A stretch of 55,319 bases of DNA, counting the filler, from Platydemus manokwari (taxonomy: Eukaryota): NCBI GenBank assembly GCA_037951405.1. It is 6 parts of 6 records of this genome, joined end to end, with 100 filler letters (N's around TTAATTAATTAA, not from the genome) between each part and the next. Parts side by side here need not be neighbours in the genome. Positions count along the whole stretch, not along the records: positions 27,075 to 36,050 come from JBBMOY011320316.1; 5 more parts are not named here. One strand, 5' to 3'. The position numbers and the translations under genes are program-made. A model generated the notes under the pieces. It saw nothing but the letters and a program-made list of their open reading frames with translations, made no database searches and was not told where the DNA came from. Below, in pieces: positions 27,075-36,050 of this stretch (positions are counted from its first letter, which is position 1; the number at the start of each line of letters is the position of its first letter).

Positions 27075-27208
27075 GTCTCTTTTAATGTAGAGTAAGTAAA
27101 TTTTATAGAACAAATAATTTGAATCATTTCTTTTAAAATATTAATTAAAATTTAAAAATTTGTTTTATTATATTAAAATCGATTATTATTATTAATAAAT
27201 CGATTAAC

Positions 27209-27958
27209 ATGAATCATTGGAATGAAAACCATTGTCCGATTTGTTATGATTTATTAGATTTCGATAATTATATCGTATTTAAAGCCTGTAATCATGCATT
27301 TTGTCAAAGTTGTGGAGATGAAATCATATTCCAGGAACACGTTTCCTGTCCATTAGATAGGAACTTTGTCAATGTAATCGAACATTCAGATCTAGTTCAA
27401 GATCTTACAAGTTATCAAATAAAGAAATGTCATGTCGATACGAACTTCATAAAATACACATTTTTACAAAATTGGAATCGTTCTCATAAAAATCTCGTGC
27501 AATATTTGAAAACATTAATTAGGTTATTGATAAAAGTGTATCCATTGGTGAAGAGTTTTCTTTCCAAGGAATTCGATCTTGAAAACACTGAAATAATAAG
27601 CATTAATAAATTATTCGAAACCATCAAGGATTCGTTTCTTGATATTATTAGAGAAGTCTTTGGACCAAGGCCGGTAAAAATAAAACTTGTGAAGAATATT
27701 CTACAAGAATATTCAAATCCAAGCCCTTCACAGAAGACGGTTTTGGGATTGGATAATAAATTGTTATCGAAACTCAAAATATCCTTGAAAAAATGTCTTC
27801 GTGATTACATGAGATTCAAATTAAAATACGTGATTGACAAGGAATACTTTGAAATTATGAAATCGAATATTGAAGATTACGTTGTATATTATACAGAAAC
27901 TTTGGAATCTGTCAATCAATCATTTTTATCGACAAAAAATATTGCTACAACCCTATAA
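27209..27958 (+). CDS. Intronless RING-finger (C3HC3D) protein, paralogue A, 249 aa; putative E3 ubiquitin ligase
   Basis: Open 750-bp ORF in very AT-rich DNA; CPIC-x14-CNH-x2-CQSC-x11-CPLD; aligns along its length with the ORFs at 31858 and 35016. Confidence 0.88.
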   Translation: MNHWNENHCPICYDLLDFDNYIVFKACNHAFCQSCGDEIIFQEHVSCPLDRNFVNVIEHSDLVQDLTSYQIKKCHVDTNFIKYTFLQNWNRSHKNLVQYLKTLIRLLIKVYPLVKSFLSKEFDLENTEIISINKLFETIKDSFLDIIREVFGPRPVKIKLVKNILQEYSNPSPSQKTVLGLDNKLLSKLKISLKKCLRDYMRFKLKYVIDKEYFEIMKSNIEDYVVYYTETLESVNQSFLSTKNIATTL

Positions 27959-30900
27959 CCTAATATATAATTTTACATCATTTATTGATTTATATATCTC
28001 GCTTTATAAATTATGATGTAATTGATAATTGTATTAAATGTGAATGACGTAATATTCCATATTTTTTCATATGTTGTTACTCAATACTCAAAAAGCTTTT
28101 TTGTTTATGTAACTTCAAATTTGTACGTATTCTTTCGAAAAATCTATGTTTTAATAATAAATATTTATAATTGATTTTTGCACTAAATAAATCGTTTATA
28201 ATTAAAAGTACTTGATTGACATGTTTAAGACTGTGCAACACTTTCATACTAACTGAAAAATCTTCATACAAATGACACGATAACAGGTAAGAACTTCATG
28301 AAATAAGTCTAGATAACAACGAAAGGCTGGATTGTTAAAATATTTATGGGATTCCGAAGTATTATAATTACCTATGAGATCAAAGTACAACGTCTTATTG
28401 TTATAAATCAACAATTCTGGTCCTGTCATAAAGCAAAATTCGTTATTTACACCTTTGGGAAAGCATATTAGCACAGGAAAAAAATCTAAGTTCTGGTTTT
28501 AATCGTAATTGTTCCGAATATTTGACATAATTTGTTTAATAGATTCCGAAAGTGATATCATTGATTACACTAGGTGAAATCAAATCTTCGTCTTGCTATA
28601 ATCAAGCAATTTGCTGCAACACGATTTCTAATTAGCCGGTGATTTTTTCCAATTTACTGTTCCATCAGGGTGATGGCAGATATATTTTGTTCTGTTACCA
28701 TATTATTCTAATTTTGTATTTAAAGTTTAAAATGATGGGTTTCAGGAGCTCTATTTAAAGGTTTTTGCTAAACATCAAAGACTACAAAATATAAAGAACT
28801 AAAAAACATGATAAATCAATATGGCCTTGTTTGATAACTAGATGATTAGCTTTAATAATGATTTGCAGCTTGTTGTTGTATGGTTCGAGTATGTATTTTA
28901 AATAATTATGAAGTCTATAGGATGTATGGGGTGCATTATCGATTTTTACATTTAGCACTTAATCTTGTTTAATGATAGATTTATTCATTTGCACGATTAT
29001 GGGTTTTATTTCAAATAATATTTTAGTTACATTTTGTCTTTCAAATGTTTTTGAAATTTAAAAATTCGAATTTGTAATCACATAATCTTCATGTGCTTTT
29101 TAGGTACCGACTTCAATTTTGAGAATTATTAATTATTATTATTGCTGCCAAACAAAAATAATTATTAATAATAGTTGTGATTGAAGAGACTGACTGTATT
29201 ATATACATACATATGAATTAATGATTTATTAGTGAGTAGTAATCGATAATATAACAAATTCGGTATAATTTTTAAAATATTTTTTAAAATATATTTGTGT
29301 TGAAATCAATTTCATCAATAGTTAAAAAATTAAAATCTAAACCCAGACAAAGCAAATAAGTTGTGTCTGAATAAAATTATTTTTCCAAACACTATGACAA
29401 GCGGTGTGAAAAATGGTTATAAAAAATACTAGAAAACATTAAGATATGATATTAAAATGTTCTTCACAACTTTTGTGCAGTATTCGATGAAAATTATCAA
29501 AGAAAAATTGAATATCTCTGCATTTAGATACGCTTCCATATTGTTGGTGCTCAATGTCAACAGTGCTTGCAGTACTTGTGATTCACCAACAGCAAGACTG
29601 GATGCCAAAACCTACTTACTAAAATATGAATTTCAATCCGATATATTGATGTTAACAAATGGGCCGCAAAGTTTGCCTGCACGCTTTTGGATGAAGAACA
29701 CTGTTGCAATTGCATGGTTTACTCGAGCAACTTTTTGAAAATTAAAATTATGCCTGCAATGTGCAATTGCAATGCATTGGAATATTTCTAATAATTTATT
29801 CTTTATTTTTAATAAAAAACTTAAAGATTTATCAATGTTGAAACCAAATTAAAAACTATAGTGATTATATTACTGATTAATTTGATTGATAAAAGTAATA
29901 TATTCAATATTTTTAGATAATGTATTATAATTGATAAAAAACAATGATTTTGAGGATTTTGAGAGTAAAGATATAAATCTTCATCTAAAGAAATTCGAAA
30001 TTTTAAAGATAAAATTCACTTAAAAATTTTCAATTCCTTCGAAATGGAACCAATAATAAAACAACTGAATATAATTAATAGTTATATCTGAAGCATCAAA
30101 TCTTTTATCTATGCTGCTACAGAGTTATTCTGATATCGAAACCTTTTCCTATAAGATATATTATAAAAACATATTGTCATGTAGCAAGATTCTGTCATTT
30201 TATCTGATTTTCGCAAACCGTATTGAATAATATAAACAAATAACTCCTTATTTACTTTCATCAGATCAACAAATTTTGAAAACTTTATGAAATATGAAGT
30301 GATACAAATTATTGAAATTTAATTTTGACACAGCTCATTTATTGATTAAATTTTCTTCAAAGATCGCACATTATTATCGATTACGTTTTAAAATGTCTAG
30401 TTTATAAATAATATCTCAATTAACTCGGTATTTTTTGATTAAAAGTAATCGACATTGTTTGATGGATTTTGCAGGATAATATTATTTAACCTTCTCTATA
30501 CGTGAGTCGTTTTTTAAGTAAGATTGATTTTAAAATCAAAAAAATTAATTCAATTTTATATTTTTATCACGAAACCACAATTTTTGTATGTTGAAACACT
30601 AAAACAAAAAATAATTGTCGCCTTCTTATTTTTATAACTAGATTTTTAAGTAGTTATGATTTTGTTTAATCGATTTGAATAACTGCGATTTTTAAATGTC
30701 ATTTAAAAAAATAATGACTTAACAAATAAGTTTTAAAATAATACTTCATTAAACATTGTTTCAAGGTTTGAAACATTTTAAATTTTAACTTTTAAATTAA
30801 CAAATATATCAGAGTTTTGGATTAAGTTAAGATAAGTGTTTTGAATTTGCTGAGAGCATTGCAAAAAACCTTATCGTTTAATTAATTATTTTCATTGAAC

Positions 30901-31857
30901 ATATCTCGAATTTAATTATCTAAAATGAATTTTAGTAATTTGAAAATAAAATTAACTAAATTTCACCTCTGAAATCTTTTAAAAAATGATTGTTTCGTAA
31001 AACGAGTCAAATTGAAAATAAATAAAAACTAGCAATAGCATCTTGTTTTAACATTAAAACCAAATGAAGAAATTATCTATATGTTTACATTTATTTTTTA
31101 GAATTAATAATATTAGGTTTTTGAAACATGTCACGGGTTTTAAAGCCAAATTACACTTAAATCAAATGAAATATTAATCAACAAGTTGAATACACAAGTG
31201 GCAGGAATGTAGTTGCGGGGGCACTACTGAGATTTCTGGTAAATGCAAAGAATCATATAAATTGAAATAACGCCAAGGCAATCGTATTGATTAGAATACG
31301 AATTTGATTTAATTATTCTGCACTGACACTTTTTGACATCCTTGTTTCTTATTTCAAGTCTATTACTATAATGAAAACCATAATTTCAAGATAAAGATAA
31401 AATAAACGTTTGATGTGTTACTGAATATTTTATTGAATGTCTCTAAGACCGAAAAAAATCAAATATACTATTTATTGGAAATCTTACAGCTACTTTCAAA
31501 GCTTTTTTATCAACATGGCATTGTTAACCATTCAACGACCTTCACCACACCACAAAATCGAATTATCTACAATAACAATGATAATACGAGTTTTGAAATC
31601 CAATAAATGCACTTAATTCTTTGTATAGAAATGAATTTTATAAAATATTTACTTTTAAGATTGATTGTAAAACAAGTCATCCGTTAAAATTCATAATTAA
31701 TTTGTCAAAGGACTTCATTTATTAACTTAAATTAAGATTTCTTACGAGCAATGAAACATATGAATTATAAAAAGTTATGAAATAATTATAATAATTTTTG
31801 GTTTTTAATAAAATAATATCAGCAGTAATGAATAGAACACATTTAATAATAATAAAT

Positions 31858-32637
31858 TTATTTACTCAATAATATTTGTTGTTTTAATTTCTCCATTTTC
31901 TGTTCAATACGCAGAAAGAGTTTTTGTGAAATTTGTAGAGATTTTTTGTGATGCTTGATAATTTTTTCCAATTCAGTTTTCTTATTATTTAAATAAGATC
32001 GCTCGTTTATCATATCGATATCGAATCGGTAAACATGAAAGCTGAAACGATCGAATAATAAACCATTCAATTCAGTAGCTTTCATATCGAGATCTTGAAA
32101 TGTTTTATGGTACACTTCATTCAAGTTAAACAACATGAACATGTTTTTGATTATTTTCCATTTATTGGTTTCGAACTTGCTCAGCGAATAAATCATATCA
32201 ATGAATAACCCGTCCACATTAAAAAATAAAACACTGATATCGTAAATTTCTGATGAATCAAAATCCATTTGTCGATGAAAGCCATTTTGAAATCGGATCA
32301 AGACGTTTTCGAGTGTTGAAATAATATTGGTCATTATATCTGTTATCTTTTTATGGAATCCTAACCAGGCATTTTCGAATTCTTCTTTTAAAAATGTTAT
32401 GTCAACACACATTTCATACTGATAATTGAAAATCGACATTGGTGTATTCATTTTTTCTAATTTTGTTATAGGAATCTTGTCAAGAGGGCATGAGGCAGAT
32501 TCGGTAAAGATAATTTCTTTGGAACAAACATCACAGAAGATATGATTACAATCCTTAAACTTAATGAAATTTTCTTCATTCAATAAATCGTAACAAATTA
32601 GACATTCCGTTATTGTCGGATCTGCTCCATTTATCAT
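31858..32637 (-). CDS. Intronless RING-finger (C3HC3D) protein, paralogue B, 259 aa
   Basis: First ATG at 32637 (MINGADP...; the ORF track starts at a non-ATG codon); CLIC-x14-CNH-x2-CDVC-x11-CPLD; heptad-like C-terminus. Confidence 0.88.
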   Translation of the reverse strand: MINGADPTITECLICYDLLNEENFIKFKDCNHIFCDVCSKEIIFTESASCPLDKIPITKLEKMNTPMSIFNYQYEMCVDITFLKEEFENAWLGFHKKITDIMTNIISTLENVLIRFQNGFHRQMDFDSSEIYDISVLFFNVDGLFIDMIYSLSKFETNKWKIIKNMFMLFNLNEVYHKTFQDLDMKATELNGLLFDRFSFHVYRFDIDMINERSYLNNKKTELEKIIKHHKKSLQISQKLFLRIEQKMEKLKQQILLSK

Positions 32638-33249
32638 AGCTCTACCAATCAATAATCGCGGAATAAATAAACAAAATTTTCATATTTATTGGAAATATTA
32701 AAAAAATTTAAAATTTACTGGATATAAATTACTAATTTATAAGATAGAAACCTCTACATAAATGATTATGTTAAAATATTATAATAAATGTAATTATAAT
32801 GTATTTAAAATTATTATTTTATACTAATTATTGATTTTTCTGAAATTGAATAATCTTTTGTAGAGCTAAAAATCGAAAGTAACCATACAATTCCTCTTAA
32901 GAGTGTATGAGGAATGAATATGCAAACGAGTATGTTTGCGGAAGAAGCACTAATGAGGCTTGATCATTGAAATAATCAGAGAAAGTCAGTCCATGAACTG
33001 AAGAAACTTATTAGAAAATTTTTGAAAAACATCGAAAACTCATCGAAAAAATACTAAATAGCAAAAGAGATACTGCAGAGTTTTAATGAAAGATCTAATG
33101 ATGGATTTTAATTAGATACATAGGATAAGTCAATAATTTGAATATGTGATTCCGTGTTATTGTCTTACAAGGCAAAAATACAATCGCAAAAGATCTGCAT
33201 TCAATTTTCGTTCAATATCTCGTTTTAACGATTTTCTATTATGCTCTTA

Positions 33250-34500
33250 ATGTTCTAGAAAAAGGATTGGTCGACTTCAGGGCTCATGACATGATATGAG
33301 CATAGGTTTTGTAGAATTGAAAATCCCTTTCTAATATGTTTCTGATTGAGCGCTGGTTGACATATATGTGTACATTAATTAAAATCAGTGGTTTTTGTGT
33401 GTGTTTATTTAATCAATATCCAATATACTTAATTGTTTTCTGAGGTGTTTCTTATCTCCTTTTCATTTATCAAAGCTTCTTCACAGTGAGGATTTATTTC
33501 CACTAACACTCTTGTCCATTCCTTATAGAGAATTTCTCCTGCAGATGTCATGAAAATTGATATTCTAGAGACGGTAATGTCATTGTTGTCCTTTTATTTC
33601 TTAAAATTTACTGATATAATTACCAATCCAATTTTAAATTGTCCAGAAGTAAATATAAATATTACACAGTATTTTCAAATACAGTATAAGTAGCAAAAAA
33701 ATAATTTTCACCTGCCATCTACATTGAATGAACTGAAATATTATTTGAAAAATCAAGCGATTATCGTAGATTTAGTGATGGGTTAAGCACTGAAATTTAA
33801 TCCGGATAAGTTTGAAAACTGTGTTTGTAATTGAACGCTAATCGGTTTGTTAGTTTTCTTCAAATGTGTCAATGTATTGTGATCGGTACGATTAATAAAT
33901 CTCTTTCCCGGTAGATAATGATTAAAATACATAGTAAACACGTGGATTACCAAGAGCTTTTTCATAGTGACGCAATAAACTTTTTCATGACTTTTAAGAG
34001 TTCTAGAAGCACAGGCTACTACTCTCCCTTTTCCAGTGTCACACAACTGGTATAGAACGCTGCAAATCACTTTTTTTTATTTTGGATCCAGAACGGCCAA
34101 AATCGGAGCTGCGTGTAATTGCTGCTTTAAGTTTCTAAAATTTCCTTACACTCTGTAGTCCACTTCAATTTCCTGTCACTTCTGGTTATCATCGCATATA
34201 AAGGAGCCCTCATTCTTGCGTAGTCTTTGATAAATTGTCTGTGGAAATTGTATAATCCAAAGAACAAATACAACTGGATTATATAACCGGGTTTTACTGC
34301 TTCCTTAATCTTCTTTTCTTTGTCGTAATTATAGTTTCTAACCACCTTCTAACCGTATCACCGAACAAATTCAATTTTCTAGTGCCAAAAGTGCATTTAT
34401 CGCAATTGATTTTCAAACCTGATAATTTAATCAACCTGAATACCTTTCGAGTTCCTTATTGTGTCTCTCTACTGTTTTTTCATACAATAAATTATGGTGA
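33250..34500 (-). mobile_element. Heavily decayed Ty3/Gypsy pol fragment (RT thumb and RNase H)
   Basis: FFGLYNFHRQFIKDYARMRAPLY (34127-34345) and RVVACASRTLKSHEKVYCVTMKKLL...HYLPGKRFINRTDH (33783-34070) are Gypsy RT-connection and RNase H motifs. Boundaries are approximate. Confidence 0.85.
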
Positions 34501-35015
34501 ACATACATTATTTCTTATTATTTCAGAAATTAGTAAATTTATTGATTTTAAATTCTTACATTACTAAGTTCGATACTAGTAGTTGTGTTCGATTATTACT
34601 GGTTGAACGTTTGGGATTTATTTGTGAATCCATCATAAAACACATTTCTAGGATAATTTAATTAACTATGGATTCACTATATAATACCTCGTGAGGTGTG
34701 TTACTGGATCTTTTATTTATTTATTTTTTTATTTTATAAATTATTATCTTTTTTCTTATTTATTATTTCAAAGTGAAAAATTGAATTTATTTACTTGCTA
34801 TAATAAACCTTTTACGTTTCTAAATTATCATATTTCACCACATAAATTTATAAAAATATCAAAAATTTTTTGCCAAATTTTACATAAATCAATTTTAAAT
34901 TCAAATGTTTATGGAAATCAAACTATCGATTGGAATTTAAAGGGAAACATGAAAAACCAATAACAGCTTGAAATTTTATTTAAAAAAATTATTTAAGAAA
35001 AATAGTAAAAGCCAT

Positions 35016-35780
35016 TCATTGATATAAGATATTCATCCTTCGATTGATCTCTACAAAGAATTCATCTGATGTTTTAATATATCTCCTGTACACTCTGAGG
35101 CTCATTATCAACTCGCTATTCTTACTCTCGATATATAATTGTTTATTTACACTCTCTAACTCAAAATCGAATCGGAAATTTCGAAACTTACCGAATAAAG
35201 CATTATCATAATGATGAATAACCTCGCTATCTATTTGTCGAATTGATTGATAAAATGTGTCATTGGAATTTATCGTCGATAAAATATTTCTTATTTTGTG
35301 TTCTTTGCCAGGTTTTGTGTATTTCATGCAGTAAAATATCTTGTAACGTAATTCATTACATTTATGTAATGAATCCCGAATGATATTGACTTCGATTGAG
35401 GTGAAATCGATTTTGCAGGTTAAGAATTTTCGAAACATCTGTGAGATATTTTCAAAGATGTCTACAATATCATTCATTGATTTGATTATCTCTCCACGGA
35501 AATCCAACCAAATTTTTAGAAATTGTTGTTTTAGAAATGATTTGTCCAAACACATCCGATATTGATAAGAGGCAGTTGTCATGGAGATATTCATTTGTTC
35601 AATCGTTTTAATCTTTCTCTTGTCGATGGGACAGGAAACATTATTTTGAAAAATAACTTCGTTTGAACATTCTCCACAAAATCTATGACGACAATCTTTG
35701 AATGTGATAACATTTTCTCTGCTCAAAGAATCATAACAAATCAGACATTCATTTTGTGAATCACCAATTTCATTGAACAT
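35016..35780 (-). CDS. Intronless RING-finger (C3HC3D) protein, paralogue C, 254 aa
   Basis: CLIC-x14-CRH-x2-CGEC-x11-CPID; colinear with paralogues A and B. Confidence 0.88.
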   Translation of the reverse strand: MFNEIGDSQNECLICYDSLSRENVITFKDCRHRFCGECSNEVIFQNNVSCPIDKRKIKTIEQMNISMTTASYQYRMCLDKSFLKQQFLKIWLDFRGEIIKSMNDIVDIFENISQMFRKFLTCKIDFTSIEVNIIRDSLHKCNELRYKIFYCMKYTKPGKEHKIRNILSTINSNDTFYQSIRQIDSEVIHHYDNALFGKFRNFRFDFELESVNKQLYIESKNSELIMSLRVYRRYIKTSDEFFVEINRRMNILYQ

Positions 35781-36050
35781 CTCAAATTGATTAAAATTGA
35801 TTAATTAATTAAAAAATAAACAAATTTTTTAAAATTAAATTTTTAAAAAATTAAAATAAAATATTTTAAAATGATTTAATTTATTTAATTTATTTTTATT
35901 TATTAAATAATATTAAAAAATTCTACATGTAGGTTTCATTGAAAATTCGATTTATTTTTTATACTATATTATTTTATTATCATATTATCATTATCATTAT
36001 CAAAATCGATAAACGTAAAATGTTTTTCAATATATTGATTTAAAAATTTT

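What the first reader, a model, noticed from the sequence alone, without database searches (positions are those of the whole stretch)
27209..35780. Cluster of three intact, intronless, highly diverged C3HC3D RING genes sharing an unrecognised C-terminal domain of about 190 aa
Seen: one 9-kb contig holds three uninterrupted ORFs of 249-259 aa, whereas every other confidently identified gene here has short introns. All three have identical RING spacing (C-x2-C-x14-C-x-H-x2-C-x2-C-x11-C-P-x-D). After the RING they share YQ-x3-C-x1-2-D-x2-F[IL]K-x2-F-x3-W, D[LF]-x3-E[IV], [IV][KR]N[IM] and a late F...Y block, and otherwise differ at most positions. Known: an Asp as eighth ligand occurs in TRAF6- and Roquin-type RINGs, but these proteins lack TRAF zinc fingers, MATH, ROQ, B-box and SPRY domains. 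Inference: a lineage-specific, fast-evolving E3-ligase family, possibly of retrogene origin, with a helical substrate-binding module; this pattern is typical of immunity or germline-conflict genes. Paralogues A and C lie at the contig ends, so the array may be larger.
Basis: partly seen in the sequence, partly recalled or inferred. Interest (0 to 1): 0.72.

Follow-up and report, generated by a model that had tools for sequence, protein, structure and literature searches.

The report
Orphan RING ligase gene trio
Three old, intact, intronless paralogues in this AT-rich eukaryotic contig encode a probable ubiquitin ligase, with a standard RING finger joined to a helical-bundle domain that has almost no relatives in public data; it is a real but fairly ordinary lineage-restricted gene family.

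Summary
Three uninterrupted ORFs (A 27209-27958 +, B 31858-32637 -, C 35016-35780 -; 249, 259 and 254 aa) have identical C3HC3D RING spacing and a shared C-terminal region of about 190 aa. They are far longer than chance allows in 26% GC DNA.

Pfam recognises only the RING. The C-terminal region matches no Pfam family, PDB sequence or solved or predicted fold beyond generic helical bundles. An exhaustive HMMER scan of 1.84 billion representatives found only two relatives, 248 and 250 aa with the same architecture, both from one metagenome assembly.

AlphaFold (pLDDT 82) gives a RING, a beta hairpin and an up-down bundle of long helices. The Ile and Pro at the positions that contact E2 in solved RINGs are invariant, and Arg/Lys at the linchpin position is present in all five.

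Synonymous sites are saturated, so the copies are old. "Fast-evolving" is not shown. Retrogene origin, virus origin and transposon cargo are unsupported; a dead Ty3/gypsy fragment simply lies between C and B.

All five genes carry A[AT]TTTGTTT 40-52 nt before the ATG.

Best reading: a lineage-restricted RING E3 family. No expression data could be obtained. Interest is moderate to low.

The parts
27209..27958 (+). Paralogue A, 249 aa, single uninterrupted CDS with TAA stop. RING ligands are residues 9-50 (27233-27358); the C-terminal helical domain runs from about residue 60 to 249.
31858..32637 (-). Paralogue B, 259 aa from the ATG at 32637, with TAA stop. RING ligands are residues 12-53 (32479-32604).
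35016..35780 (-). Paralogue C, 254 aa, with TGA stop. RING ligands are residues 12-53 (35622-35747). This copy was modelled with AlphaFold at pLDDT 82.
27157..27165 (+). Upstream element AATTTGTTT, starting 52 nt before the ATG of A.
32669..32677 (-). Upstream element ATTTTGTTT, starting 40 nt before the ATG of B.
35818..35826 (-). Upstream element AATTTGTTT, starting 46 nt before the ATG of C.

Best explanation
The three ORFs are functional, old paralogues of a lineage-restricted family of RING-type E3 ubiquitin ligases.

Shown: an N-terminal cross-brace RING of the C3HC3D type (Asp as eighth ligand, as in TRAF6). It keeps the Ile between ligands 1 and 2, the Pro after ligand 7, and an Arg/Lys directly after the last ligand, which is the linchpin position of RNF4. 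Also shown: a short beta hairpin followed by a domain of about 185 aa, predicted to be an up-down bundle of long helices.

Inferred: the RING recruits and activates a ubiquitin-charged E2. The helical bundle, which diverges much more than the RING (16-33% against 42-56% identity), provides substrate choice, self-association, or both. Each paralogue would therefore target different partners.

The copies arose by old DNA-level duplication together with their 5' regions. Each keeps the element A[AT]TTTGTTT 40-52 nt before the ATG, probably a core-promoter or 5'-leader signal.
For: - ORF lengths are far beyond chance. All five known members stay open although synonymous sites are saturated, and pN is below pS in every pair.
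- Pfam zf-C3HC4_2, zf-RING_2 and zf-C3HC4_3 score above their gathering cut-offs.
- A PDB profile search hits only RINGs: RNF4 1e-7, HOIL-1, RING1B, TRAF6 1e-4. The family's Asp aligns with the last Cys of RNF4, and the following R/K aligns with the Arg after it.
- All eight ligands, the Ile and the Pro are invariant in 5 of 5 sequences.
- The AlphaFold model from five sequences has pLDDT 82 and pTM 0.70, with helices 80-122, 128-154, 159-169, 175-199 and 214-253.
- Two further members with the same architecture and length (P0001 E 2e-24, P0003 E 7e-6) are the only true hits among 1.84e9 representatives.
- Upstream element: the exact 7-mer TTTGTTT occurs in 5 of 5 genes within a 12-nt positional window. 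This was matched in 0 of 5000 mononucleotide shuffles and 1 of 5000 Markov-1 shuffles.
- C3HC3D is a recognised RING type (PMC3166285).
Against: - There is no transcript evidence.
- No biochemical test was possible.
- The role of the helical domain is pure inference. Its structural matches are generic bundles, within the noise the tool states for helical proteins.
- Selection could be measured only crudely, because dS is saturated.
- The source organism is unknown, so the biological context is missing.
Confidence: 0.7

Rival explanations
1. The genes come from a large DNA virus (for example Nucleocytoviricota) and sit in, or were assembled with, a host genome. They would be viral RING proteins that manipulate host ubiquitination.
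For: - By language-model features, the nearest ESM Atlas clusters are RING proteins of 130-270 aa from Nucleocytoviricota, with scores of 0.89-0.92.
- The genes are intronless and AT-rich.
- A short conserved motif at a fixed distance before the ATG resembles giant-virus promoter organisation (the comparison rests on my own knowledge).
- The closest RING matches in IMG/VR and JGI metagenomes lie on giant-virus contigs.
Against: - Those matches cover only the RING (residues 1-63). The proteins have other architectures, such as SNF2-RING or a C-terminal RING, and none carries the C-terminal domain (hmmsearch E > 0.02).
- Only about 25% of the 9-kb piece is coding. It holds no other viral gene but does hold a decayed Ty3/gypsy fragment.
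- The Atlas recognition score was below the tool's reliability level.
- BFVD Foldseek gave nothing at E < 0.001.
Confidence: 0.07
2. The proteins are RING-containing partners or adaptors without ligase activity of their own, such as the inactive half of a heterodimer or a scaffold. The RING would serve only as an interaction module.
For: Many RING proteins are inactive partners; BARD1 and BMI1 are examples (my own knowledge). No activity data exist here. The helical bundle could be a pairing module among paralogues.
Against: The positions that typically decay in inactive RINGs are kept in all five members: Ile after ligand 1, Pro after ligand 7, and Arg/Lys after ligand 8.
Confidence: 0.13
3. 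The genes are cargo or a domesticated gene of a transposable element, or they are retrocopies scattered by retrotransposon machinery.
For: - A Ty3/gypsy pol fragment (RT end plus RNase H; Pfam RT_RNaseH 8e-16) lies on the same strand between C and B.
- The genes lack introns.
Against: - The pol fragment is about 0.7 kb, frameshifted and isolated.
- No LTRs, TIRs or other long repeats flank any of the genes.
- The family has no match to PFAM transposon domains.
- All copies keep the same upstream element at the same distance from the ATG. That fits duplication of the gene with its promoter better than independent retroposition.
Confidence: 0.05
4. The ORFs are recently dead or never-functional open frames, that is, pseudogenes or chance ORFs.
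For: No RNA evidence is available.
Against: - Three open frames of 262-273 codons stand against a simulated maximum of 211.
- All zinc ligands are retained across five sequences that are saturated at synonymous sites.
- The shared fold is predicted with confidence.
Confidence: 0.03

Closest known systems
TRAF6-type (C3HC3D) RING domains
   Same: Same ligand pattern, with Asp as the eighth ligand in a C-P-x-D ending. The PDB profile match to the TRAF6 RING is E 1e-4. The type is described in PMC3166285.
   Different: There are no TRAF-type zinc fingers, no coiled-coil/MATH (TRAF-C) domain, and no further Cys/His clusters. The loop between ligands 2 and 3 is 14 residues here; by my recollection it is shorter in TRAF6.
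RNF4 RING (small RING E3 that activates E2~Ub)
   Same: It is the best PDB sequence match (E 1e-7). The alignment places the family's D-[RK] on the C-R at the end of RNF4's RING, which includes the linchpin Arg.
   Different: RNF4 has N-terminal SIMs and a C-terminal RING that dimerises through its tail. Here the RING is N-terminal and is followed by a helical domain of about 185 aa.
Baculovirus CG30 / IE2-type proteins (N-terminal RING plus C-terminal helical or leucine-zipper region, about 260 aa)
   Same: Similar size and order of parts. Several CG30/IE2 models appear in the BFVD list.
   Different: These matches are not significant (E 0.045-0.27, TM 0.13-0.2). There is no sequence similarity beyond the RING.
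Microsporidian NemLGF2 (expanded RING family of Nematocida displodere)
   Same: It is an example of a species-restricted, expanded family that carries a RING (PMC4928854).
   Different: NemLGF2 proteins average 467 aa, mostly have a signal peptide or N-terminal TM segment, and carry the RING at the C-terminus. This is the opposite architecture, so the resemblance is only an analogy.
Generic up-down helical bundles (designed bundles; CINP/C1orf109; flagellin D0/D1)
   Same: They are the best structural alignments to residues 76-254: Z 13.6 for 8gl3, 11.5 for 9gwj_C and about 10-11 for flagellins.
   Different: Sequence identity is 4-10%. The Z values lie in the range the tool reports as common for helical bundles. 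No shared function is implied.

Membership tests
RING-finger E3 ubiquitin ligases | Eight cross-brace zinc ligands with canonical spacing | tested here: met
   C-x2-C-x14-C-x-H-x2-C-x2-C-x11-C-x2-D in all three window genes and in P0001 and P0003
RING-finger E3 ubiquitin ligases | Match to curated RING profiles above the gathering threshold | tested here: met
   zf-C3HC4_2 scores 32.2, 27.0 and 34.7 bits (cut-off 27). zf-RING_2 scores 32.6, 28.7 and 33.4 bits (cut-off 27.3).
RING-finger E3 ubiquitin ligases | E2-contact residues and linchpin Arg/Lys retained | tested here: met
   Ile between ligands 1 and 2 and Pro after ligand 7 are invariant. R/K follows ligand 8 in 5 of 5 sequences and aligns with the Arg after the last Cys of RNF4. 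The functional meaning rests on established knowledge of RNF4 and c-Cbl.
RING-finger E3 ubiquitin ligases | E2-dependent ubiquitin transfer | not testable with these tools
   Needs an in vitro ubiquitination assay.
TRAF family | TRAF-type zinc fingers after the RING | tested here: not met
   No zf-TRAF hit at E <= 1. Only one semi-conserved Cys follows the RING.
TRAF family | C-terminal MATH/TRAF-C domain | tested here: not met
   No Pfam hit. The model is all-alpha after residue 69.
TRIM/RBCC | B-box zinc finger between RING and coiled coil | tested here: not met
   No B-box hit and no Cys/His cluster.
Roquin | ROQ domain and CCCH finger | tested here: not met
   No Pfam hit.
Nucleocytoviricota RING proteins | Homology beyond the RING to a viral protein, or viral gene neighbours | tested here: not met
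   Loci in IMG/VR and JGI match residues 1-63 only. The C-terminal HMM finds nothing in them. There are no viral genes in the piece.
LTR-retrotransposon cargo | Gene lies inside an element bounded by LTRs with intact or recognisable gag-pol | tested here: not met
   No long direct repeats. Only a frameshifted 0.7-kb RT/RNase H relic lies between C and B.

The most novel reading that the evidence does not exclude
The C-terminal domain of about 185 aa is a previously undescribed substrate-recognition module of a taxon-restricted E3 family. Its paralogues have diversified to follow different targets, for example in a host-parasite or other genetic conflict, and are co-regulated through their own conserved upstream element A[AT]TTTGTTT.
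Probability: 0.2. Interest if true: 0.55.

Novelty: new variant of a known kind. Interest (0 to 1): 0.33.

Why it matters
If active, these would be E3 ligases whose target-binding part has no known relative: a small new entry in the catalogue of ubiquitin-ligase architectures, and a marker family for a poorly sampled AT-rich eukaryotic lineage. The fixed-position upstream element gives a testable handle on promoter structure in that lineage. Orphan RING families are common in eukaryotic genomes, so a specialist would not be surprised. No long-standing question depends on this one.

Tried and rejected
- Word-indexed protein searches with C, with the five-sequence alignment and with P0001 found nothing beyond P0001 and P0003.
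- The third hit of the exhaustive scan, P0002 (811 aa, six short stretches in a tandem-repeat protein), was rejected as spurious.
- IMG/VR and JGI metagenome scans gave RING-only matches with other architectures.
- Pfam on the C-terminal parts alone gave nothing. A PDB sequence profile gave only noise, with mineralocorticoid receptor at E 0.05.
- Foldseek against PDB (twice) and BFVD, and the Atlas structure search, gave no match at E <= 0.001 or TM >= 0.5. VIA-wide gave generic helical bundles only.
- The Atlas feature search on the C-terminal part gave no usable hit.
- dN/dS is not interpretable because pS is 0.66-0.88.
- A search for degenerate extra copies in the piece found none.
- Rfam and tRNA scans found none.
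- Pfam on 15 other open segments of the piece found only the RNase H relic.
- The 15-nt form of the upstream motif with one mismatch was not significant on its own. Neither was "any 9-mer with <= 1 mismatch in 5 of 5", which 206 of 500 shuffles reached. Only the exact, position-restricted statistics were significant.
Scripts that scanned for motifs or ran BLAST stopped at 35828; one local base-composition count covered the whole piece.
- The source organism could not be identified with the tools at hand.
Full report
**What is there**

The piece (27075-36050, 8976 bases, 26% GC, CpG observed/expected about 1.1) holds three long open frames:

| Gene | Coordinates | Strand | Length |
|---|---|---|---|
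| A | 27209-27958 | + | 249 aa |
| B | 31858-32637 | - | 259 aa from the ATG |
| C | 35016-35780 | - | 254 aa |

Stop-to-stop they span 269, 273 and 262 codons. The next longest open frame in the piece is 106 codons. In 2000 Markov-1 simulations of the piece, the longest frame averaged 97 +/- 16 codons, with a maximum of 211. With a stop probability of 0.084 per codon, 250 open codons have a probability of about 3e-10.

A and B are convergent. C and B are in tandem on the minus strand.

**Domain content**

- Pfam recognises only a RING finger at residues about 7-59. Several RING models score above their gathering thresholds.
- The C-terminal 190 aa give no Pfam match, alone or in context.
- A PDB sequence profile of the whole family hits RING domains only: RNF4 1e-7, HOIL-1 RING1 8e-7, RING1B 4e-6 and TRAF6 1e-4. 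In the RNF4 alignment the family's C-P-x-D-[RK] lies on C-P-T-C-R. The Asp therefore takes the place of the eighth ligand, and the following Arg/Lys takes the place of the Arg after it. From my own knowledge of the RNF4-UbcH5~Ub structure, that Arg is the linchpin that locks E2~Ub in the closed state.
- All eight ligands, the Ile between ligands 1 and 2 and the Pro after ligand 7 are invariant in five of five family members.
- C3HC3D is a recognised RING type, exemplified by TRAF6 (PMC3166285).

**Structure**

With three sequences the model was poor (pLDDT 65). With five sequences it reached pLDDT 82 and pTM 0.70. It shows:

- a RING at residues 11-58;
- a beta hairpin at 59-68;
- a short helix at 69-78 carrying the invariant Y-Q;
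- long helices at 80-122, 128-154, 159-169, 175-199 and 214-253.

Foldseek against PDB and BFVD gave nothing at E <= 0.001. The Atlas structure search stayed below TM 0.5. The exhaustive VIA search aligned residues 76-254 to designed helical bundles (Z 13.6), CINP/C1orf109 (Z 11.5) and flagellin D0/D1 (Z about 10-11), at 4-10% identity. By the tool's own note this is the level expected for any helical bundle. The fold class is therefore an up-down helical bundle, and no specific relative is known.

**Distribution**

An HMMER profile of the C-terminal domain was run against 1.84 billion representative proteins. It found three hits.

- P0001 (248 aa, E 2e-24) and P0003 (250 aa, E 7e-6) have the same length, the same RING and the same C-terminal domain. 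Both come from one ENA metagenome assembly, on contigs of 1.5 and 0.9 kb with 28% GC.
- P0002 is a repeat protein and is spurious.

Word-indexed searches added nothing. The window's own proteins are not in that collection. The family is therefore known from five genes in all.

**Age and selection**

Proportions of synonymous differences are 0.66-0.88, which is saturated. Non-synonymous proportions are 0.36-0.52 and lie below the synonymous value in every pair. RING identity is 42-56% and C-terminal identity is 16-33%.

The paralogues are therefore old, and their divergence does not show fast evolution. Five sequences this diverged all remain open and keep every ligand. That is the best available evidence for purifying selection.

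**Upstream element**

All five genes carry A[AT]TTTGTTT in sense orientation, starting 40-52 nt before the ATG. In the piece this pattern occurs only five times on both strands, three of them at these sites. In each metagenome contig it occurs once, at the equivalent site.

- The exact 7-mer TTTGTTT in five of five upstream regions within a 12-nt positional window was reached in 0 of 5000 mononucleotide shuffles and 1 of 5000 Markov-1 shuffles.
- An exact 9-mer in at least four of five regions was reached in 11 and 50 of 5000 shuffles.
- Looser statistics were not significant.

I read it as a core-promoter or 5'-leader element that was duplicated with the genes and then kept. This argues for DNA-level duplication rather than independent retroposition.

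**Surroundings**

Between C and B lies a frameshifted relic of a Ty3/gypsy pol gene, at 33786-34455 on the minus strand. It comprises the end of RT plus RNase H (Pfam RT_RNaseH 8e-16).

No LTRs, TIRs or other long repeats flank the genes. No further family copies, no tRNA or Rfam matches and no other recognisable coding segments were found. About a quarter of the piece is coding, which fits a eukaryotic chromosome and not a virus.

**Virus lead**

The language-model search placed protein C nearest to Nucleocytoviricota RING proteins (scores 0.89-0.92, with recognition below the tool's reliability level). RING-based scans of IMG/VR and JGI metagenomes returned giant-virus contigs.

Those proteins match only residues 1-63. 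They have other architectures, and none carries the C-terminal domain. I consider the viral reading unlikely (0.07).

**Expression**

Expression is untested.

**Verdict**

Fast evolution, retrogene origin and an immunity or conflict role are not shown.

The most likely mechanism is a RING-type E3 ligase (confidence 0.7). The RING activates E2~Ub, and the helical bundle mediates substrate choice, self-association, or both. The RING features are shown. The activity and the role of the bundle are inferred.

It is a new variant of a known kind, of moderate to low interest.

Noticed in passing
window 27157-27165 (+), 32669-32677 (-), 35818-35826 (-); L011 555-563; L012 126-134: The conserved element A[AT]TTTGTTT starts 40-52 nt before the ATG of all five family genes. 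AATCRAT-like words often follow it nearer the ATG. It is a possible core-promoter or leader signal of this lineage.
   Followed up: yes
window 33786-34455 (-): A decayed, frameshifted Ty3/gypsy pol relic (end of RT plus RNase H; Pfam RT_RNaseH 8e-16) lies between paralogues C and B. No LTRs were detectable.
   Followed up: partly
window 30659-30722 (+): This is one of only two other copies of the upstream element. It is followed by AATCGAT and, 37 nt after the element's start, by an ATG that opens a frame of only 8 codons. It could be the promoter relic of a fully decayed paralogue, or chance; no family similarity is detectable downstream.
   Followed up: partly
window 27959-31857: A 3.9-kb stretch between A and B has no ORF over 101 codons and no Pfam, Rfam or tRNA match. 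Its content is unexplained.
   Followed up: partly
L016 131-274 (WLWG01014304.1): A metagenome ORF of about 190 aa has an N-terminal RING that also ends C-P-x-D-R, and a C-terminal CCHC knuckle. Its RING resembles the family's, but its C-terminus is unrelated.
   Followed up: no
They lie upstream of gene C and were left out of all later searches.
   Followed up: no
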